This document shows, in pieces, positions 375 to 10,911 of a stretch of 64,000 nt of DNA. Position 1 is the stretch's first letter. Each line of letters opens with the position of its first letter. This DNA comes from Octopus sinensis (Eukaryota). The notes beneath the pieces were generated by a model. That model ran no database searches. It had not been told where the DNA came from and was given only the letters and a program-made list of their open reading frames with translations. The translations under genes were made by a program, and so were the position numbers. The stretch lies in the NCBI RefSeq assembly GCF_006345805.1, contig NW_021824846.1, positions 1 to 64,000 on the forward strand, in the 5' to 3' direction.

Positions 375-1172
375 TCCACAACACCATATCTGCGTAGCTG
401 AGGGCATGTCTGAGGGGGCCATTATGAACAACAGTGGTCCCAAAACAGTGCCTTGCGGAACACCGCTCACTATTTTCGTGTTATTGGAGGTGACCCCATT
501 GGCTACTACCACCTGGTTCTATCCTTCAAAGTCATGAGCCATTCTCCCAATTTTCCAACTAGCCGATCACGCAGCTTGTGACATATCATTCCATGATCGA
601 CTTTATCAAAAGCCTTTGCAAAGTCGAGATATATCACTTCCACATTTGAGTGGTTGAGCAGTTGTTTCAGCACCCAGTCATGGTGTAGGAGCTGAGTTAG
701 GCAGCTTCTTCCTGGTCGGAAACCATGTTGGGTGTCAGGCAGCAAGTCATTTCATTGAAGGAAGGCGATTAGTTTTCTTCTGACTATTCGTTCCATGACC
801 TTGCTGATGTGTGAGGTCAGAGAGATAGGTCTGTAGTTCTTGGCCTCCGCTCTGCTGGCTCCTTTATGAATAGGGAATATTTTACCCTACTTCAGTTTTC
901 TTGGAAGTTTGCCAGTTGCAAGGAAGCTCTGAAAGAAGAACTGCTGTGGTCTTGCCAGGACTCTCTTACATGCTTTTAGAAGGATTGCTGGGAATCCATC
1001 GGGGCCAGTAGCTGAGTTTGGGTTCATTTCATCTATAGCCTTTATTACATCGTCTTCCTTTATATTGATGTATTCAATCATCGTTGCCTCTGATTTTATA
1101 TCTGCAGTGGTAAAGAAGTCAGTTGGATTGCTGACTTGAAAGCGCACTAGGGGTGGAGTGAAAATACTTTCG
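375..1172 (-). mobile_element. Degraded non-LTR retrotransposon reverse transcriptase fragment (CR1/L2-type)
   Basis: Three consecutive frameshifted minus-strand ORFs (887-1147, 506-745, 300-512) carry RT motifs in order: SATGPDGFPA, QHGFRPGRSCLTQLL, YLDFAKAFDKVDH, SGVPQGTVLGPLLF. A YAD remnant (tacgcagat) lies near 390. Truncated on the left; bounded by (TA)n on the right. Confidence 0.92.
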
Positions 1173-1424
1173 AATTGCTCATATATATATATATATATAT
1201 ATCTATATATATATATATTATATATATTATATAATATATATATAGTAAAGTAAATGAGAGGGCTAGCAGCAGGCTGTTTCGCCTCTTCATTTACTTTACT
1301 ATATACTGAACCTTACAAAGTTCCTGACGATAAATTTGTCGTATTTACATACCGAAATTTACCGGTAAATAATTGTTGGTTACATGAAAAACCACAGAAA
1401 AATATTTACCATTTTTATTGTATA

Positions 1425-1465
1425 TATAATATGTATAGTGTATATATATATATACTATCTATATC

Positions 1466-1533
<68 letters not shown>

Positions 1534-1579
1534 TATGTATATATATATGTATAATATATATATATATGTATATGATATA

Positions 1580-1634
<55 letters not shown>

Positions 1635-1872
1635 TATATATATATATTTATATATATAATATATATATATATTTATATATATATAATATTTATATATATA
1701 TATATTTATAATATATAATCATATATATATATATATATTTATATGATATATTTATATATATTTATATATATATATATATATATTTATTAATATATATATT
1801 AATATATATATATATTTATATATATATATATTATATATATATAATCATATATATATAATATAATTATATATA

Positions 1873-1918
<46 letters not shown>

Positions 1919-2008
1919 CATATATTTATAATATATATATAATTATTATATATATATCATTATGCATATATTTATTTATATATATATATATATTATATAA
2001 TATAATAT
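1425..2008. repeat. Interrupted (TA)n microsatellite
   Basis: Direct reading. Similar tracts at 1173-1243, 4397-4895, 5620-5710, 6185-6358 and 12281-12340. Confidence 0.97.
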
Positions 2009-2150
2009 GGATGGTTGTATACTGTCATCTAACACGAACGTGACAGTAGGGGGTACACCACCGCTGTTTAGCCCTGATGGCTTTGACACATTTTTCCTGT
2101 GTCCTTATATACATTTACGAAGGGGAGACAAATACCCCCAGCCGCCCGGG

Positions 2151-2207
2151 CTGCATCTAGGGACACGTGTTTCAGGATGATTGTCCTTCGTCGGCCTAGA
2201 GTAGCAG
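2151..2207 (-). ncRNA. Type I hammerhead ribozyme motif, CCGACGA core variant
   Basis: Minus strand reads ctgctac-UCUAGG CCGACGA AGGA-caauca-UCCU GAAA CACGUG UC|CCUAGA-ugcag. Stem I is 6 bp plus a ctgc/gcag extension, stem II is 4 bp, and stem III is the palindrome ACACGUGU. Predicted cut between 2162 and 2161. Confidence 0.8.
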
Positions 2208-2405
2208 ACACCGTTCAGCTGACGATTAAATCTTTATTATAGGCCCGATGGCCCGAATTAAGAGGGGACATTACAAAACAGGACATGGGGTACATATAAT
2301 AAAAAAATCGAAAAATATGAAGTGAAAATGAATTATTTATAATGAATTAAATGGAATGGCTTACGAGCCCCCAAAACTCGGAGTTTCATTTAAAATACAA
2401 TTCTG

Positions 2406-3731
2406 CTATACTGGACGTTCATCTGTAATGTATTCTATTAACCTCTCCTGGTCTACGATCGCTGGCAAACTGTTGTAACGGATATATTGTATTTCGCAAA
2501 CTGTCGAAAACACACTTTTCAATTTCATCTACGACCGCCGACTTCACTTATTCATCAAATATTTTTGGGTTCAACCTAACCCTGATTAAACCTTTCTTAC
2601 CTGCCAGTCTCTTTTCGATTTCTTTGTCTTTCATATACAATATTACTGCTTTAAGATTTTTTCCTTCGGGTCTTCCTCCTTCCTTACATACTTTTAACTG
2701 TTCTTCCACTCTTCTTTCCCATTCTTGCTCTGCCGTTAAATTTGCCGGTTCTGTCGCTTTCGCTTTTGCATTCTTATCTTCGCACGTTCGATCTTCCATC
2801 TCGTCTGTAGACTTATTTTTCGCTTTTTTCTTTTTTTGAACTTTAGGTGGTGATTCCACCCTCGCTCTCTTTCTATCTTCTTTTCCTTCTGTTCTTTCCT
2901 TTTCTTTCTCCAAATCGTCACCACTTTCCACATTTTCTGTGTTCACACATTCTTCATCCGCCAATTGCAATATCGTCCGAGCATTTGCAAAATACTGTCC
3001 GAGCTTCCAATGTTCTCATCGGACACACATCTTTCATGTGGCCTCTAATTTTACATGTGTAGCACACTGGGGGTCTCCCCTCCACCACGACTCTGAGTCG
3101 TGTCTCGTCGGGGAACACCAACTCCTCGGGGATGTTATACAGGTCTGGCATGGTTATATGAACCAAAGCCTGCACCGCATAACCCCACCACTGTACATCT
3201 TTTGACTTTTCCACTTTCAATATTTCAACGCTTTCTTTGCAGTTGAATACCACTGCTGCTAAGATTCTTTCCATGTTCAGCTCCGGTGAAATCTTACTGA
3301 TTCGTATTCTTACTGCCCTTTTTCCACAATAACTTGGTAATAACATCCATTTTTCTGTTTAAAGTATTTGCGTGGCACTCTTCTTCGCTTCGTCTTCGTT
3401 TTTAAAATGAAAGAACCACTGTTGCGTATTCTCTACCTCTATTATAGAAGGTAGGTTCTCCTTCAATTCCATTCAGACAGCACTCAATTTCCTCTATCGG
3501 TGCCACTTCTATTTTGTTTGAAGCCACGTTCCACGTTCTGTATGTTATAATACGTTTTTCTGCTTCTTTCGTTTATTTTTCAGGTGGTGTGACCCTCACG
3601 CAGTCACCTTCCTTCTTCAAGCTGTCGAAATATTTCTTCAAAATCTCCTTCTCGACGATAATTTCTTCCAACTGCAATTCGCTCGCAGCCAAGCCCTTGC
3701 CTGCTGCTCCCGCATACGTTTGGGTTTGCAT
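2406..3731 (-). pseudogene. Decayed LINE-ORF1/gag-like nucleic-acid-binding protein with CX2CX4HX4C zinc knuckle
   Basis: Reconstructed from ATG at 3731 (MQTQTYAGAA) through ORFs 3573-3839, 2954-3346 and 2548-2970. Breaks are TAA at 3573-3575 and 3359-3361 and frameshifts near 3404, 2975 and 2550-2490. Contains EGRPPVCYTCKIRGHMKDVCP (knuckle at 3023-3064) after RRM-like segments, then a K/E-rich tail. Confidence 0.78.
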
Positions 3732-4131
3732 TTTCGAGAAAAATCTCAAAAAAATTTCCCACGCCGCAACCGCTTCCACCAACAAATTCGATCTCACAGC
3801 TGCGATACAACAATAACATAATAAAAATTTCCGACACAATAAAAAAAAAACCGGTGCGCTGACGATATCTGCCTCGACTCGTAATGTATATATCTAAATT
3901 TCAGTGAAGTCTATTCACTGATTATCAAAATAAGAAATACTAAATTCCTAAATCTCTCGTTGAGACTGTACGGTGGTGGGGCGATAGAATGGTTGTATAC
4001 TGTCAATCTAACAAGAACGTGACAGTAGGGGGTACACCACCGCTGTATAGCCCTAGCAAGGGTCGAACGCCTCCTGATGGCTTTGACACATTTTTCCTGT
4101 GTCCTTATATACATTTACGAAGGGGAGACAA

Positions 4132-4170
4132 AGGCCGACGAAGGACAATCATTCTGAAATACGTGTCCCT
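4132..4170 (+). ncRNA. Second copy of the CCGACGA hammerhead, with 5' stem I truncated
   Basis: AGG CCGACGA AGGA-caauca-UUCU GAAA UACGUG UC|CCU. It sits in the 64-nt loop of the 3933-4396 hairpin. Confidence 0.7.
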
Positions 4171-4429
4171 AGATGCAGCCCGAGCGGCTGGGGGTATTTG
4201 TCTCCCCTTTGTAAATGTATATAAGGACACAGGAATAATGTGTCAAAGCCATCAGGAGGCGTCGATGCTTCCTAAAGCTAAACAGCGGTGGTGTACCCCC
4301 TACTGTCACGTTCGTGTTAGATTGACAGTATACGACCATTCTATCGCCCCCACCACCGTACATGTCACTACGAGAGATTTAGAATTTAGTATTTCTGATA
4401 TATATATATGATTATATATATATTTATAG

Positions 4430-4461
<32 letters not shown>

Positions 4462-4471
4462 TATATATATA

Positions 4472-4556
<85 letters not shown>

Positions 4557-4559
4557 ATT

Positions 4560-4598
<39 letters not shown>

Positions 4599-4666
4599 AT
4601 AATTATATTATATATTATATATATATATTTTATATATATATCTATATATATATATATATATATTAT

Positions 4667-4700
<34 letters not shown>

Positions 4701-4713
4701 ATATATATATATT

Positions 4714-4744
<31 letters not shown>

Positions 4745-4830
4745 GTATATATATATAATTATATATATATATATAAAATTATGTATATATTTATATATAT
4801 ATGATTATATATATATTTATAGATATACAT

Positions 4831-4889
<59 letters not shown>

Positions 4890-4899
<10 letters not shown>

Positions 4900-5545
4900 T
4901 GAAATGCGTTGGATCGCTTTCAAGGATTGACTCCAAAATTTACAGGGCCATGTAAAATGAGGTGACGATGCCCGTGGGCTACGTTAGAAATCCTTATCTT
5001 AAAAGTTGTCGTTTCTAGTGCCAAAAACCCACTTTGACAAGTCCACTCCCATTCTTTTACGTATCCGTCTTCCTCACTCACGCTATTAGCTCCATTCCCC
5101 TCTAACTCCCCTTCACTTTCCCTTTATAAGTTCGTCAAACGGCGTTCTTTATCTCGCTGTCTGCATTCATAGAGAGAATTATCATCGCCACCAACAACAC
5201 ACAATCATGAGAACAAATATTATGAATCAGATATTTCTTGCGTTCATTTATATGTGTGTGTGTGTGTGTTCTATATATAAATATGTATATATAATGTATA
5301 TATACAAAGTGTATATATCTGTATTTATGTATATTAAACTTTTTAATACTTTTTGAGAGTTATATATATTTTTAAACAAATTATAAATATAATTTAATAA
5401 TTTTTATTTTAAATTTAAATCATTTAAATTTTTCAATTTTATATTTTATATATTTTCTATATTATATTTTTATTTTTATGTTTTTGTTTTTGGTCTTTCA
5501 CTGTTTGATTTGCCTATTAGTGGTTTTATCTCTAATTTAATTTAT
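4890..5545 (+). mobile_element. Non-autonomous Helitron-like family copy (5' part)
   Basis: ggattgactccaaaatttacaggg...ctttgacaagtc matches 9179-9300. 5183-5545 is a direct repeat of 6405-6720. Confidence 0.6.
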
Positions 5546-5588
5546 ACATATATATATATAATTTGTATACATTTGTATATATAATGCG

Positions 5589-6180
<592 letters not shown>

Positions 6181-7489: not shown

Positions 7490-8017
7490 CAACCATGACT
7501 GTACCATGTACATCAAACAGACATCTACATATCAATAAGTCTAATTCCTCTGTCCGCTTGATATTGATTATTCTAGATTGATTCGATTGGCTTATAGTTT
7601 TAAATTTGAATCACAATAAATGCCTGCAAAAACCCATATACTCAACCAAAACAAACAAAATCCAATATAGACTCTCATTTATTACATATTAGTATTACAG
7701 TATCTAAAACCAGGTATCTAACTATGATACTCATACACACTCTGTAATTTTAGAAAACTCCAAGAATATCATATTACTGTGTATATACCAAAATGAATAT
7801 ATTCTTTCTTGCCGCAGTGTATTTCCCTTATAAACCAGGACAAAAAAACACAAACAAAAAACAATTAATACAGGACATATATATTTATATACATGTGTAG
7901 CTACAAAATTATATAAAATTATAAATTTATAAGTTGCATGTTTTAAAATTGTAGAAGACTACTAGTATAATAAGATACAGAAGGGAGTTAAAATATTACT
8001 AGTAGAAAAGCTAAGTT

Positions 8018-8431
8018 CTATTTAAATCTAGAGAAAGTGTACGGTAGTTTGTGAATGCAAAAATTTTTTTTTTCATTTATGTTATTAATAATAGGCCTAC
8101 CCGCTTTGATAATGAAAAAAATGTCATTAATACATAGAGAGCATTTTTTATTTTTTCCATTATACACAGGTGCAGAAGTTAGTATTTTCCAATTTAATTT
8201 AAAATCTAATTTCTTACTTTTGAGTTCCCAAATGTATGCACTTAACCCCGTAGAGTAGATCCTATTTTTATTTCTAAAAGTATATCTATGATAATTAAGT
8301 CTCTGTTTCATGCTATTCATAGTTGCTCCGATGTATACCCTACTACTAAATTGTGTATCCACAGTGCATTGATAAACTACCTCCTTCCTGAAGCATTGGT
8401 TACCAAACACACATTTATTTCTGTTTCTGCA
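8018..8431 (-). pseudogene. Cys-rich GIY-YIG endonuclease C-terminal domain of a Penelope-like element
   Basis: CRNRNKCVFGNQC..VVYQC..VYIGAT..KQRLNYH..STGLSAYIWELK..WKIL..CSLC..CIH. The frame is open for ~138 codons up to the inversion junction. Confidence 0.88.
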
Positions 8432-8466
8432 CTACCATACACTTTCTCTAGATTTAAATAGAACTT

Positions 8467-9095
8467 TGTCCCTTTTAAATGTTAGTGTTTTGCTTTCTGC
8501 CTTGAAGCAGACCTTTCCGCTTTCACTGTCTGATATTTATGATTGATCTTTCAAACTATTTTCTTTCTCAACTTACTCAAGATCTTTTGTTGTTTATAAA
8601 TGAGACAGAGATATATAGAGAAAGATAGAGAGTAAGAGAAATCGAAGGAGAGTCCGAGAGAAAGGAAGAGTAAGAGAGTGGGAAAGGGAGAGAGAAAGGA
8701 GAGAGAAACAAAGAGGGAGAATCATCATCATCATCGTTTAACGTCCGTTTTCCGTGCTAGCACGGTTTGGACGGTTTGACCGGGGTCTGGGAAGCCAGGA
8801 GGCTGCACCAGGCTCCAGTCTGATCTTGCAGTTTTTCCACAGCTGGATGCCCTTCCTAACGCCAACCACTCCGTGATTGTATTGGTTGCTTTTTTCGTGC
8901 CGCCGGCACAGGTGCCACGGGGGAGGGGCGCTGGCAGCGGCCAAGATCGGTTGGTGCTTTTTACGTGCCACCGGCACGTCAAGGCGGCATTGCCATCGGC
9001 CACTTTCGGATGGTGCTTTTTACGTGCCGAAAGGAAGCAACAGAAGGTAACAACCACACTCTTACTCGCACGTAGAGCGGGTCACCTGAAGCTAG
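8467..9095 (+). mobile_element. Helitron-like 3' terminal fragment
   Basis: A ~630-bp direct repeat of 10285-10911. It ends with the hairpin actcgc-acgtaga-gcgggt followed by cacctgaagCTAG|T. Confidence 0.7.
8721..9040 (-). mobile_element. SINE / LINE 3'-tail repeat ending in (TGA)n, carried inside the Helitron-like element
   Basis: The minus strand ends ...cggaaaacggacgttaaacgatgatgatg. A second copy lies at ~10539-10850. Recognised from memory as an abundant octopod repeat. Confidence 0.6.
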
Positions 9096-10911
9096 TATAT
9101 ATTATAATTCTGAAATGCGAAAAGTTTGTTTGTCTGGTTTTGGCATTGAGAACAGGTTAAAGGGCACTAGATCCCGTCGGATTGACTCCAAAATTTACAG
9201 GGGCATGTAAAATGAGGTGAGGACGCGAGTTGGCTAGGTTAGAAATCCCCATCTTAAAAGGTGTCGTTGCTAGGGCTAAAAATGCACTTTGACAAGTCTA
9301 CTCACAAGTCTATTCTTTTATGTATCTGTCCTCCTCCATCACTCACTCTCTTTCCTCCCTTCCATCACATTCTATCTATAACGTCGTTTCACAGCGTCTA
9401 TTATCTTTCCCTCGCCGCCATCGCATTCTATTGTCTGCCTGTCTTCCTCCATCTCACTCTCTCTCTCCTCCATTCCTTTCACTTTCTCTCTATAACGTCA
9501 TTTGATAGCGTCTACTATCTTTCCTTCGCCAGCGCTGTCACTCTCTCTCTCTCTCTCTCTCTCTACGTCTGTCTGCATTCATAAAGAGAATTATCATCGC
9601 CACCACCACCACCACCACACAATCATGAGAATCTTTCTCTTAAAACAAATCATTTTTAGGTTTCAAAATATTTCATTTTTCAGTCCTCTCTTTCATATAT
9701 CACCTTTTCTTCCTCGATCTCTCTTTTCCCCTTCTCTCCATTTTCTCTCTATATATAACGACGTTTGGCACCTCCACCGTCTCTCTTTCTTCTGCAGCGC
9801 GTCTCTCAATAACAGCCGCAAAAGTTTAACTATTCCTACCACAGGTCTTTCAGAAAGGTAACAGATATTATTTATTTTTGCGTGGATAAAAAGAATTTAT
9901 TTGTATGCTCAAGCCGACCGTCGTTAACAAAAATTTTTCTGTAAATTTGAAAAATTTTCCAGTTTTTTAATATTTAGGAATTCTCTGTTACATCAAGCTA
10001 AAAATTTGCGCCAGCCTTTCAAATCGTCAATGTGTTGCCGTCCATGATGAAGATGCTTTGAATGCTTGCCATGGTGAGTCTACTGTCGTGAGAAGAATCA
10101 CTTCAAAACTTGGTGTTTAGGAATTTTCGTTTACATCAAGTTCAAAATTTTACGCCAGCCATTAAACTGCAACTACGTTGCTGTCCGTCGTTAAGAAATG
10201 CTAGCCATGGTGACTCTACTATCTTCAGATTCCAATCCTTCAAACTTTAGCTTCCAATTTTTTTTTCAGCTTGCAAGTTCGTCTGTCCCTTTTAAATGTT
10301 AGTGTTTTGCTTTCTGCCTTGAAGCAGACCTTTCCGTTGTCACTGTCTGATATTTATGATTGATCTTCCAAACTACTTTCTTTCTCAAATTACTCAAGAT
10401 CTTTTGTTGTTTATAAATGGGACAGAGATAGATAGAGAAAGATAGAGAGTAAGAGAAAGCGAGGGAGAGTCCGAGAGAAAGGAAGAGTAAGAGAGTGTGG
10501 AAGAGAGAGAGAAAGGAGAGAGAAACAAAGAGGGAGAATCATCATCATCATCATCATCGTTTAACGTCCGTTTTCCGTACTAGCACGGTTTGGACGGTTT
10601 GACCGGGGTCTGGGAAGCCAGGAGGCTGCACCAGGCTCCAGTCTGATCTTGCAGTGTTTCTACAGCTGGATGCCCTTCCTAACGCCAACCACTCCGTGAT
10701 TGTAGTGGGTGCTTTTTTCGTGTCACGGGGGAGGGGCGCTGGCATCGGCCACGATCGGTTGGTGCGTGTTACGTGCCACTGGCACAGAAGCCAGTCAAGG
10801 CGGCGCTGCCATCGGCCACGTTCGGATGATGCTTATTACGTGCCGAAAGGATGCAACAGAAAATAACAACCACACTCTTACCTGCGGTTAGAGCGGGTCA
10901 CCTTAAGCTAG
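9096..10911 (+). mobile_element. Apparently complete ~1.8 kb non-autonomous Helitron-like element, head-to-tail with the preceding 3' end
   Basis: 5' tatattataattctgaaatgcgaaaagtttgtttgtc begins immediately after CTAG at 9095. The 3' end is the hairpin acctgc-ggttaga-gcgggt followed by caccttaagCTAG|T at 10911. No Rep/Hel ORF. Confidence 0.68.

What the first reader, a model, noticed from the sequence alone, without database searches (positions are those of the whole stretch)
2009..4396. Ribozyme-bounded ~2 kb unit whose only cargo is a LINE-ORF1/gag-like zinc-knuckle gene
Seen: in minus sense the order is repeat, ~440-codon decayed ORF (RRM-like segments, CYTCKIRGHMKDVC knuckle, K/E-rich tail), AATAAA at 2233-2238, hammerhead, repeat; the unit length is 1978 nt. 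No RT or endonuclease follows. Established: Penelope elements normally encode RT plus GIY-YIG and no CCHC ORF1; retrozymes are non-coding; bdelloid Terminons carry accessory ORFs between hammerhead repeats. Inference: a protein-coding retrozyme or stand-alone Terminon-like module that could yield a ~2 kb linear or circular RNA encoding its own RNA chaperone and be mobilised in trans. I know of no such description in cephalopods.
Basis: partly seen in the sequence, partly recalled or inferred. Interest (0 to 1): 0.88.

Follow-up and report, generated by a model that had tools for sequence, protein, structure and literature searches.

The report
ORF1-only LINE nested in hammerhead retrozyme
The ~2 kb unit is two octopus jumping genes nested together: a decayed LINE derivative that keeps only its RNA-binding ORF1 gene has inserted, with its own 16-bp target duplication, into a small hammerhead-ribozyme repeat (a retrozyme); this is an unusual pairing of known element types, not a new kind of coding ribozyme element.

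Summary
The title overstates them: only one hammerhead-like motif lies on the ORF's strand, at 2201-2162. The second is on the opposite strand, in an inverted partial copy at 4133-4396.

The repeats belong to a ~0.4-0.5 kb non-coding hammerhead element inserted in (TA)n. It shows the partial-tandem plus inverted-copy architecture typical of Penelope-like elements.

The ORF segment (3850-2227) is a separate insertion. A 16-bp duplication flanks it, and ORF-less "empty" units exist elsewhere in the genome.

The segment belongs to a large family:
- Protein search gave 14,028 first-look candidates.
- Many copies carry intact 440-455-codon ORFs, with median dN/dS 0.145.
- The predicted protein is tandem RRM plus a CCHC knuckle.
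- Homologues are ORF1 of full LINEs (APE-RT-zfRVT) in Argonauta and in a marine metagenome contig.
- An octopus LINE of the same family shares the 3' tail motif ending AATAAAGAT and occupies the same retrozyme site.

The closest concept is HAL1 or HeT-A: a non-autonomous LINE that keeps only ORF1.

Module lineages and retrozyme classes are mixed in the tree, which implies repeated insertion about 10 nt upstream of the ribozyme. Some composites were then copied as units.

Verdict: new variant of known kinds, moderately interesting.

The parts
1440..2008 (.). (TA)n-rich microsatellite. Left half of the target into which the retrozyme composite is inserted.
   Evidence: Read directly. Most other class-A composites are also flanked by (TA)n. 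(TA)n is the preferred target reported for several Penelope-like clades (PMC8557442).
2009..2161 (-). 3' part of the class-A retrozyme unit, downstream of the predicted cleavage site. Contains direct repeat A (2009-2132).
   Evidence: the repeat finder D3/D4 and I1. It is 87-95% identical to many other genomic copies.
2162..2201 (-). Minimal type-I hammerhead-like motif: CUCUAGG / CCGACGA / AGGA-CAAUCA-UCCU / GAAAC-ACGU-GUC. Predicted cleavage between 2162 and 2161. The helix I 3' strand CCUAG lies at 2161-2157.
   Evidence: Motif scan. Covariation on alignment A3. The helix III sequence is palindromic, as in dimer-acting Penelope-type hammerheads. There is no Rfam match, and the core has C at position 4.
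2211..2226 (-). 3' copy of the target-site duplication of the ORF1-only module (ATCGTCAGCTGAACGG).
   Evidence: Compared with the 5' copy and with empty units that carry one copy.
2227..3850 (-). ORF1-only LINE derivative ('module'). It has a 5' T-run and UTR at 3850-3732, a decayed ORF at 3731-2406, and a 3' UTR at 2405-2227 ending AATAAAGATTTA (AATAAA at 2238-2233).
   Evidence: Boundaries come from filled/empty comparison and from class-B copies that match only this stretch. The family has 14,028 first-look candidates.
2406..3731 (-). Decayed ~441-codon ORF1-type gene: two RRM-like domains, a CCHC knuckle (3064-3023), a K/E-rich linker and a C-terminal domain. It has at least 3 stops and at least 3 frameshifts.
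   Evidence: Three-frame translation. tblastn of an intact paralogue falls into three frames. Intact paralogues are L011, L012 and L035-L044.
3851..3866 (-). 5' copy of the target-site duplication (ATCGTCAGCGCACCGG).
   Evidence: It matches the 3' copy at 13 of 16 positions.
3867..3986 (-). Retrozyme 'leader'. Contains a TATA-like GATATATAC about 33 nt upstream of the module's first base.
   Evidence: Contiguous with the hammerhead part in empty units (L012, L020, L021, L023).
3987..4132 (-). Partial (5'-truncated) direct copy of the retrozyme, forming the pseudo-LTR. It starts 30 nt after the cleavage site, so it has no ribozyme. It carries a 21-nt insertion.
   Evidence: the repeat finder D3/D4 and sequence reading.
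4133..4396 (+). Inverted 5'-truncated retrozyme copy. It begins exactly at the hammerhead (4133-4178, read on the + strand, with helix I cut to 3 bp).
   Evidence: Inverted repeats I1-I3, 91-97% complementary. The spurious MIR856 hit reflects this long hairpin. The same architecture occurs in L007, L010 and L011.
4397..4880 (.). (TA)n-rich microsatellite. Right half of the target.
   Evidence: Read directly.

Best explanation
This is a nested composite of two non-autonomous retroelements.

(1) A small (~0.4-0.5 kb) non-coding hammerhead-bearing repeat, a non-LTR retrozyme or Penelope-like pseudo-LTR derivative, was inserted into a (TA)n microsatellite. It has the Penelope-type signature: a partial tandem copy plus an inverted 5'-truncated copy.

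(2) Inside that unit, about 10 nt upstream of the ribozyme, sits an ORF1-only derivative of an octopod L1/Tx1-like LINE. This is the HAL1/HeT-A type of element. It was inserted by target-primed reverse transcription using the ORF2 protein (APE-RT) of autonomous relatives in trans, which left a 16-bp target-site duplication.

This LINE family uses the site repeatedly, in its ORF1-only and full-length forms and in three diverged retrozyme classes. Some composites were later copied as units.

The ORF1 protein (tandem RRM plus a CCHC knuckle) is presumably the RNA-binding and chaperone component that coats its own RNA in cis. That would explain the purifying selection on it.

The window copy is dead.

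Shown: anatomy, TSDs, empty sites, homology to LINE ORF1, purifying selection, and the mixing of module lineages with flank classes.

Inferred: mobilisation in trans, site preference of the endonuclease, and copying of composites by Penelope-type machinery.
For: **The module is an insertion.**
- Filled versus empty comparison: the window has ATCGTCAGCGCACCGG | module | ATCGTCAGCTGAACGG. ORF-less units in L012, L020, L021, L023 and L007 carry one copy of this sequence, contiguous with the hammerhead.
- TSD pairs of 14-18 bp flank the module in L002, L003 (16/16), L010 (15/15), L012, L015, L016, L027, L006, L013, L026, L034 and L041.
- The 3' junction is constant while the 5' junction varies through 5' truncation (L028 at q616, L031 at q592, L005/8/9 at q580).

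**The module derives from a LINE.**
- phmmer against 1.8e9 proteins gave 386 hits. The best are octopod proteins.
- P0019 (29% identity, E 7e-27) is ORF1 of a complete Argonauta LINE. That LINE has an APE-RT-zfRVT ORF2, a 16-bp TSD, a 5' T-run and a 3' end reading ...AATAAAGAAATG.
- P0061/P0151 is followed 11 nt later by an APE-RT ORF2.
- The octopus LINE in L031 has an RT 65% identical to the Argonauta one. It ends with the same tail blocks as the module (GTCC...TG[C/T]AATGTCCCCT...ATAATAAAGAT). It also sits at the same site of a class-B2 retrozyme.
- The LINE is abundant and includes intact ORF2 (11,973 first-look candidates, open frames up to 1181 aa).

**The ORF is functional in the family.**
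- Fifteen intact ORFs give a median dN/dS of 0.145, and 0.07 over the RRM+CCHC region.
- The fold is tandem RRM. The only PDB or Pfam sequence match is the CCHC knuckle.

**The site is used repeatedly.**
- The module tree interleaves flank classes A, B1 and B2.
- L042's module is only 70% identical to the window's, yet sits in a near-identical class-A flank.

**The repeats are retrozyme/Penelope-type.**
- Class-A composites lie at different sites, flanked by (TA)n or by 7-10-bp TSDs.
- This architecture matches that described for Penelope-like elements (PMC8557442). Animal retrozymes have been proposed to derive from Penelope-like pLTRs (10.64898/2026.07.22.740005).

**Composites are copied as units.**
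- L005, L008 and L009 share one idiosyncratic truncated junction at three loci.
- Within class A, flank variants track module clades.
Against: - The ORF1-to-ORF2 linkage is therefore shown only in Argonauta and in a metagenome contig.
- The LINE in L031 is not necessarily the module's closest autonomous partner. Its 3' UTR aligns only over the last ~55 nt.
- Site preference could be mimicked by an ancient composite followed by recombination or template switching between co-expressed RNAs.
- The window's TSD copies differ at 3 of 16 positions, while the retrozyme's internal repeats differ by only 3-9%. This hints that the module was already in the retrozyme when the composite landed here, so the order of events at this locus is uncertain.
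- No expression data were available.
Confidence: 0.7

Rival explanations
1. This is the first reader's model: a unitary protein-coding retrozyme. The ORF is an integral, selected cargo of the hammerhead element. The element is transcribed from tandem copies, self-cleaved to a ~2 kb RNA that may circularise, and mobilised by Penelope-like RT in trans.
For: - Composites occur at 14 or more independent sites with Penelope-type architecture and (TA)n targets.
- Some class-A composites keep intact ORFs (L011, L012).
- Within class A, flank variants co-vary with module clades.
- An identical idiosyncratic junction occurs at three B1 loci.
- Units with an ORF bounded by two same-sense hammerheads exist: L008 at 1833 nt and L034 at 1988 nt.
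Against: - The module has its own TSD and LINE-type termini.
- It also occurs without any hammerhead, in 1708-nt head-to-tail arrays and at ordinary sites.
- Module lineages are shuffled among retrozyme classes.
- The nearest relatives of the window's retrozyme are mostly short loci, 0.5-0.8 kb where measured, that are not among the ORF-module hits.
- The window locus has a single sense ribozyme.
Confidence: 0.2
2. This is a host gene family: a domesticated ORF1-derived RNA-binding gene amplified in tandem clusters. The retrozyme association would then be incidental.
For: - Purifying selection is strong.
- There are many intact copies.
- Some arrays sit behind a conserved 290-nt flank with CCAAT and TATAAAA boxes about 25 nt upstream of the first unit.
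- Annotators have called genes on some copies.
Against: - There are thousands of dispersed copies, with TSDs, 5' truncations and many decayed members.
- Arrays are built from units of different age, with the youngest at the 5' end. Their members are closer to units at other loci than to their neighbours. This fits successive insertion, not local duplication.
- The 3' tail motif is shared with an autonomous LINE.
Confidence: 0.05
3. This is an ordinary LINE fragment: the 5' part (5' UTR plus ORF1) of a normal LINE that landed once between repeats, or an assembly or alignment artefact of decayed repeats.
For: The ORF is LINE ORF1-like. The window copy is decayed.
Against: - LINE insertions are 5'-truncated, not 3'-truncated.
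- The module carries the LINE-type 3' tail directly after ORF1 and has the same ends in dozens of copies.
- Intact, selected ORFs are common.
Confidence: 0.03

Closest known systems
HAL1 ('half-L1'), the non-autonomous ORF1-only derivative of mammalian L1 (PMC5753468, citing Smit 1999 and Bao & Jurka 2010)
   Same: It keeps only ORF1 plus LINE termini and lacks ORF2. It is multi-copy. It is presumed to be mobilised by the ORF2 protein of autonomous relatives.
   Different: - The ORF1 is type I (RRM+RRM+CCHC), not Transposase_22.
- There is no poly(A) tail.
- The octopus family forms head-to-tail arrays.
- It recurs at one site of hammerhead repeats.
- Purifying selection is shown here across deep subfamilies.
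Drosophila HeT-A (from my own knowledge, not checked in the library)
   Same: It is a gag/ORF1-only non-LTR element with zinc knuckles that lacks RT and depends on another element's RT. It builds head-to-tail arrays by repeated addition at one end.
   Different: HeT-A is telomere-specific and belongs to the Jockey clade. The octopus arrays are interstitial as far as the contig coordinates show. No telomere link was tested.
Animal non-LTR retrozymes and Penelope-like pseudo-LTRs (PMC7229834; PMC8557442; bioRxiv 10.64898/2026.07.22.740005)
   Same: - The flanking repeats are short (358 nt for B1, ~0.4-0.5 kb for class A), non-coding and tandem-prone.
- They carry a type-I minimal hammerhead with a palindromic helix III.
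- They show a partial tandem plus an inverted 5'-truncated copy, and (TA)n targets.
   Different: Described retrozymes are non-coding and yield RNAs of ~170-400 nt. Here a 1.6-kb coding LINE derivative is nested in the unit, and the composite is itself multi-copy. The class-A core has C4. No PLE RT with matching pLTRs was identified.
Sequence-specific LINEs (R1, R2; Tx1-group elements that target repeats). PMC1919474 for R1; the Tx1 group is from memory (Kojima & Fujiwara 2004).
   Same: The 3' junction is precise, the 5' truncation is variable, the same short target is used repeatedly, and arrays are separated by target copies. ORF2 has APE+RT+zf-RVT and ORF1 has RRM+CCHC, as in the L1/Tx1 group (PMC5203782).
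   Different: Specificity is a preference, not absolute: L039 and the Argonauta copy sit at ordinary sites. A retrozyme site next to a hammerhead has not, to my knowledge, been reported as a LINE target. Clade assignment was not tested by phylogeny.
Chlamys-2_cBra, a Penelope-like element with an upstream gag-like zf-CCHC ORF and a 3' hammerhead (PMC8557442)
   Same: A CCHC ORF and a hammerhead occur in one Penelope-type unit.
   Different: That element is autonomous (it encodes RT) and comes from a charophyte alga. Here there is no RT, and the ORF is demonstrably a LINE-derived insertion.

Membership tests
LINE ORF1p, type I (RRM + CCHC; Khazina & Weichenrieder classes as summarised in PMC5203782) | At least one RRM followed by a CCHC zinc knuckle | tested here: met
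   The AF2 model built with an MSA has pLDDT 80-91 over residues 20-240. Top Foldseek hits are tandem-RRM proteins (IMP3 RRM12, E 2e-4). CX2CX4HX4C is invariant in alignment A1. Pfam zf-CCHC scores just below cutoff. Profile hits to retroviral NC knuckles reach E 4e-6.
LINE ORF1p, type I | Encoded immediately upstream of an APE-RT ORF2 in autonomous members | tested here: met
   In L046 (Argonauta) the ORF1 at 7998-9584 overlaps an ORF2 from 9578 that has Exo_endo_phos, RVT_1 and zf-RVT. In L045 the ORF2 starts 11 nt after the homologue. This was not shown for an Octopus copy.
HAL1-like ORF1-only non-autonomous LINE | Only ORF1 is present; ORF2 is absent in all copies | tested here: met
   The module ends at AATAAAGAT about 180-300 nt after the ORF1 stop in all of the ~40 copies examined. 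The only RT next to a copy (L024/25) is a 5'-truncated foreign LINE inserted into the ORF.
HAL1-like ORF1-only non-autonomous LINE | Shares termini with an autonomous LINE and shows TPRT hallmarks (TSD, 5' truncation) | tested here: met
   The 3' tail motif is shared with the L031 LINE over ~55 nt. TSDs are 14-18 bp, like the 16-bp TSD of the Argonauta LINE. 5'-truncated copies occur. The 5' end of an Octopus LINE could not be fetched.
HAL1-like ORF1-only non-autonomous LINE | Mobilised in trans by ORF2p | not testable with these tools
   This needs a retrotransposition assay.
Animal non-LTR retrozyme (applies to the flanking repeats) | Type-I hammerhead within short (150-450 bp), non-coding, tandem-prone repeats | tested here: met
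   The B1 unit is a 358-nt tandem (L008). Empty class-A units occur. There are ORF-less class-A loci of 0.5-0.8 kb and 2134 first-look candidates. Fold covariation is strong. No Rfam hammerhead model matches.
Animal non-LTR retrozyme | Catalytically competent hammerhead core (CUGANGA...GAAA...UH) | tested here: inconclusive
   Class A reads CCGA[C/U]GA (C at position 4). B1 reads UUGAUAA (U3/A8, which would replace the C3-G8 pair). B2 reads UUGACGA (U3.G8).
Animal non-LTR retrozyme | Expressed as self-cleaved linear or circular RNA | not testable with these tools
   No RNA data were available.
Animal non-LTR retrozyme (applied to the whole 2-kb unit) | Non-coding monomer bounded by same-sense ribozymes | tested here: not met
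   The window unit has one sense ribozyme and contains a 1.6-kb coding-derived insertion.
Penelope-like element | Encodes PLE-type RT, with or without GIY-YIG EN | tested here: not met
   There is no RT or EN in the unit or in composites.
Penelope-like element | Insertion architecture: partial tandem (pLTR), inverted 5'-truncated copy, microsatellite target | tested here: met
   compared with the description in PMC8557442.
Terminon (bdelloid giant Athena-based element) | Giant, telomere-associated, Athena RT with accessory ORFs and telomeric repeat stretches | tested here: not met
   The unit is 2.4 kb and has no RT. No telomeric repeats were seen. The flanks are (TA)n.

The most novel reading that the evidence does not exclude
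The association may be a three-way parasitic arrangement, not an accident. In this reading, the octopod LINE family and its ORF1-only derivative target the spot just downstream of the retrozyme's TATA-like box and about 10 nt upstream of its hammerhead. The insert would then borrow a promoter and a ribozyme-defined 3' end. The resulting composites would be co-propagated by Penelope-type machinery. Tandem composites such as L008 (1833 nt) and L034 (1988 nt) would yield ~1.8-2.0 kb self-cleaved, possibly circular, protein-coding retrozyme RNAs.
Probability: 0.2. Interest if true: 0.75.

Novelty: new variant of a known kind. Interest (0 to 1): 0.5.

Why it matters
Each ingredient is known: ORF1-only LINE derivatives, site-preferring LINEs, and hammerhead retrozymes derived from Penelope-like elements.

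I found no description of three things. The first is a LINE family that repeatedly lands beside a retrozyme's ribozyme. The second is a retrozyme that propagates with a 1.6-kb coding insert. The third is either of these in cephalopods (literature searches, and the two papers read, mention neither octopus retrozymes nor coding retrozymes).

The ORF1-only family is very large and under strong purifying selection. That makes it a natural system for asking what a LINE ORF1 protein does for an RNA that lacks ORF2.

It also matters for annotation. Octopus gene sets already contain models built on these copies, which can be mistaken for host genes.

Tried and rejected
- **Rfam.** Gathering threshold on the whole window, and E<=10 on 1900-4500, gave no hammerhead. 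The MIR856 hit is the long inverted repeat. E<=1 on six paralogous loci gave nothing relevant.
- **Tandem Repeats Finder.** On the L035 array it found nothing, because the period limit is 500. The array was shown by BLAST instead.
- **The search for homologous proteins.** The whole ORF gave no hit. The K/E-rich words probably swamped the candidate list. The exhaustive phmmer search succeeded.
- **Single-sequence AF2.** The model was useless (pLDDT 38).
- **PDB sequence search.** It found only the knuckle.
- **L024/L025.** These looked like ORF1-RT linkage but are a 5'-truncated foreign LINE inserted into the ORF, duplicated as an inverted segmental pair.
- **Ribozyme-defined 3' end.** I considered that the hammerhead cleavage site defines the module's 3' end, because the L031 junction falls at GUC. 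I rejected this as a general rule, because TSDs place the 3' junction at AATAAAGAT(TTA).
- **Twin priming.** I considered twin priming by the LINE as the source of the inverted copy. ORF-less retrozyme loci also combine copies of the unit on both strands, so the inversion belongs to the retrozyme.
Full report
**Setting.** The window is contig C1317 of a 2.72-Gb, 13,516-contig genome.

**Checking the observation.** Read in minus sense, the region 4396-2009 contains the following, in order:
- an inverted copy of a repeat (4396-4133)
- a partial direct copy (4132-3987)
- a 120-nt leader
- a decayed ORF (3731-2406)
- AATAAA (2238-2233)
- a hammerhead-like motif (2201-2162)
- the repeat again (2132-2009)

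Direct-repeat spacing is 1979 or 2000 nt. The inverted arms are 91-97% complementary.

The ORF falls into three frames, with at least three stops and three frameshifts. It carries CYTCKIRGHMKDVC. Nothing in the unit resembles RT or an endonuclease.

Rfam finds no hammerhead even at E<=10. The motif nevertheless has the full type-I layout: helix I CUAGG/CCUAG, core CCGACGA, helix II AGGA/UCCU, then GAAAC-ACGU-GUC.

The same fold recurs in two other, strongly diverged repeat classes found next to paralogues: B1 with core UUGAUAA and B2 with core UUGACGA. On an alignment of 16 distinct instances, 98.1% of pair cells are paired, 10 of 14 pairs show changes on both sides, and slid controls reach at most 49%.

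One caveat applies. My motif scan required some pairing, so the numbers lean towards the structure. However, the three classes were first met simply as the flanks of paralogues.

Helix III is short and palindromic, as in the dimer-acting minimal hammerheads of Penelope-like elements (PMC7229834). The class-A core has C at position 4 where canonical hammerheads have U, so activity is open.

One point in the title fails. The upstream direct repeat lacks the ribozyme, and the second ribozyme copy (4133-4178) is on the other strand. The unit is therefore not ribozyme-bounded, and a 1978-nt monomer cannot be excised at this locus.

**The ORF belongs to a very large family.**
- A DNA search of the genome returned dozens of copies at 70-92% identity.
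- A protein search returned 148 scored hits, all at E<=1e-81, out of 14,028 first-look candidates. Many have open frames of 440-515 codons.
- Fifteen intact ORFs from the fetched loci give pairwise dN/dS with a median of 0.145. The value is 0.07 over the RRM-knuckle region, 0.23 in the K/E-rich linker and 0.28 in the C-terminal domain.

The window copy is therefore a dead member of a family whose protein has been under selection.

**The ORF segment is a discrete insertion.** Many paralogues match only query positions ~550-2170, which correspond to window ~3850-2227.

In the window, this segment is flanked by ATCGTCAGCGCACCGG (3866-3851) and ATCGTCAGCTGAACGG (2226-2211). ORF-less units in L012, L020, L021, L023 and L007 have one copy of that sequence, joined directly to the hammerhead.

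Matching 14-18-bp duplications flank the segment in twelve other loci, including perfect 16/16 (L003) and 15/15 (L010) pairs.

The segment starts with a T-run and ends ...CCTATAATAAAGAT(TTA). The 3' junction is constant. The 5' junction varies through truncation and target deletion: L028 at q616, L031 at q592 and L005/8/9 at q580. These are the marks of target-primed reverse transcription.

**The protein is a LINE ORF1p.**
- Pfam sees only a borderline zf-CCHC, and PDB sequence searches see only the knuckle.
- An exhaustive phmmer search found 386 relatives.
- One of them, from Argonauta (P0019; 29% identity over 235 residues, E 7e-27), is ORF1 of a complete LINE. Its ORF2 overlaps the ORF1 stop and has Exo_endo_phos, RVT_1 and zf-RVT. 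That element has a 16-bp TSD, a 5' T-run and a 3' end ...GCGAATAAAGAAATG.
- A more distant relative on a marine metagenome contig is followed 11 nt later by an APE-RT ORF.
- With a 26-sequence alignment, AlphaFold models residues 20-240 confidently. Foldseek then returns tandem-RRM proteins (IMP3 RRM12, U2AF65, raver1, Prp24).

RRM plus CCHC is the 'type I' ORF1p of L1/Tx1-group LINEs (PMC5203782).

**An autonomous relative in the same genome.** Locus L031 holds the APE-RT-zfRVT ORF2 of an octopus LINE. Three observations link it to the module:
- Its RT is 65% identical to the Argonauta element's.
- Its 3' end (…GTCCTGCAATGTCCCCTTCT…ATAATAAAGAT) shares the terminal blocks of the ORF1-only segment.
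- It is followed by the class-B2 flank, at the same junction as B2-associated modules.

This LINE has 11,973 first-look candidates, open ORF2 frames up to 1181 aa, and its own tandem arrays.

The segment is therefore best described as an ORF1-only, non-autonomous derivative of this LINE family. The concept matches HAL1 in mammals (PMC5753468) and, from memory, HeT-A in Drosophila.

**The repeats are retrozymes of Penelope type.**
- The B1 flank is a 358-nt tandem unit with one hammerhead per unit (L008).
- The class-A unit alone has 2134 first-look candidates. Of the 40 best places (91-95% identical to the window's copy), all but two are at loci that do not appear among the ORF-module hits. 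Those with several pieces span only 0.5-0.8 kb.
- Class-A composites sit at different sites, usually in (TA)n or with their own 7-10-bp duplications. They repeat the layout of an inverted 5'-truncated copy plus a partial tandem.

Craig et al. describe exactly this layout and target for Penelope-like elements (PMC8557442). A 2026 preprint argues that animal retrozymes derive from Penelope-like pLTRs (10.64898/2026.07.22.740005).

**One capture or many insertions?** A tree of module sequences interleaves flank classes. The window (class A) groups with B1 copies at about 90% identity, but is only 78-80% identical to most class-A modules. L012 (A) groups with B2 copies. L042's module is 70% identical to the window's, yet lies in a nearly identical class-A flank.

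Together with the variable 5' junctions and the full-length LINE at the same site, this indicates repeated insertion at the homologous spot, about 10 nt upstream of helix I, in three retrozyme classes.

Composites were also copied as units. L005, L008 and L009 share one idiosyncratic truncated junction at three loci. Within class A, flank variants track module clades.

At the window locus the order of events is uncertain. The module's TSD copies differ at 3 of 16 positions, while the retrozyme's internal repeats differ by 3-9%.

**Related arrangements.** A diverged subfamily forms head-to-tail arrays with a 1708-nt period and no hammerhead (L035-L040). Units within an array differ by up to 20%, with the youngest always at the 5' end. 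They are closer to units at other loci than to their neighbours. This points to successive insertion at the 5' end of resident copies.

One such array is flanked by a single TSD (L039). Four others lie behind a conserved 290-nt flank with CCAAT and TATAAAA boxes about 25 nt upstream of the first unit.

TATA-like boxes also lie about 30-35 nt upstream of the module in class-A and B1 units. This suggests, but does not show, that inserts exploit a resident promoter.

Units carrying an ORF between two same-sense hammerheads do exist: L008 at 1833 nt and L034 at 1988 nt.

**Verdict.** The 'protein-coding retrozyme / Terminon-like module' reading does not hold as stated. The gene is a nested ORF1-only LINE derivative with its own TSD, and the window unit has a single sense ribozyme and a dead ORF.

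I rate it a new variant of known kinds, because the recurrent LINE-retrozyme association appears undescribed. Interest is moderate.

Noticed in passing
L035 2705-9229, L036, L037, L038, L039, L040 (G000 C5:62.29 Mb, C7:80.33 Mb, C17:52.74 Mb, C3:74.09 Mb, C30:4.27 Mb, C20:0.96 Mb): These loci hold head-to-tail arrays of 3-4 ORF1-only units (period 1708 nt) without any hammerhead. Units differ in age, with the youngest always at the 5' end. L035 has three intact, near-identical 439-440-aa ORFs.
   Followed up: partly
L035, L037, L038, L040: the 290 nt upstream and about 800 nt downstream of the arrays: Four arrays on different chromosomes share a conserved 5' flank with CCAAT and TATAAAA boxes about 25 nt before the first unit. 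They also share a conserved 3' flank that begins with the same ~20 nt as the unit (CGTCTTAGGCTTTTAGT...). The nature of this ~1.1-kb host sequence is unknown.
   Followed up: partly
L023 + strand 295 and 1249; - strand 4400: This is a different hammerhead with a canonical core (GUCCAC CUGAAGA UUGUCGAUCAAGACAA GAAAC AAUUG UA GUGG). It sits next to a class-A composite and probably belongs to another retrozyme family.
   Followed up: no
G000 C9:70942463-71054235, C2:157229989-157241439, C2:49403424-49414767: The autonomous LINE also occurs in regularly spaced tandem arrays, with APE hits every ~4.27 kb or ~5.3 kb. Many ORF2 frames of 1130-1181 aa are open, which suggests recent activity.
   Followed up: no
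L024/L025/L031 (G000 C20:32.61 Mb and 32.83 Mb): This is an inverted segmental duplication about 216 kb apart. It carries a LINE, an ORF1-only module, and a 5'-truncated unrelated LINE inserted into the module's ORF at q1696.
   Followed up: partly
Proteins P0036, P0050, P0134: These are database gene models in which a piece of this ORF1 is fused to WD40 repeats, an RGS domain, or an astacin-ShK protease. They are probably annotation chimeras with repeat copies, though exaptation is not excluded.
   Followed up: no
window 593-913 (- strand): This is a decayed RT fragment of some other LINE (28% identity to the L031 RT, E 7e-8). It lies in the stretch 400-1140, just left of the microsatellite.
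   Followed up: no
window 4066-4263: Rfam MIR856 (a plant miRNA family) matches at E 6e-12 but far below its gathering score. This is an artefact of the long perfect hairpin made by the inverted retrozyme copies.
   Followed up: yes
window 1150-2008, 4397-4880, 5560-5710: These are very long (TA)n-rich microsatellites. The only ORF of 170 codons or more in the whole 64-kb window (4383-4955) is an artefact of them.
   Followed up: yes
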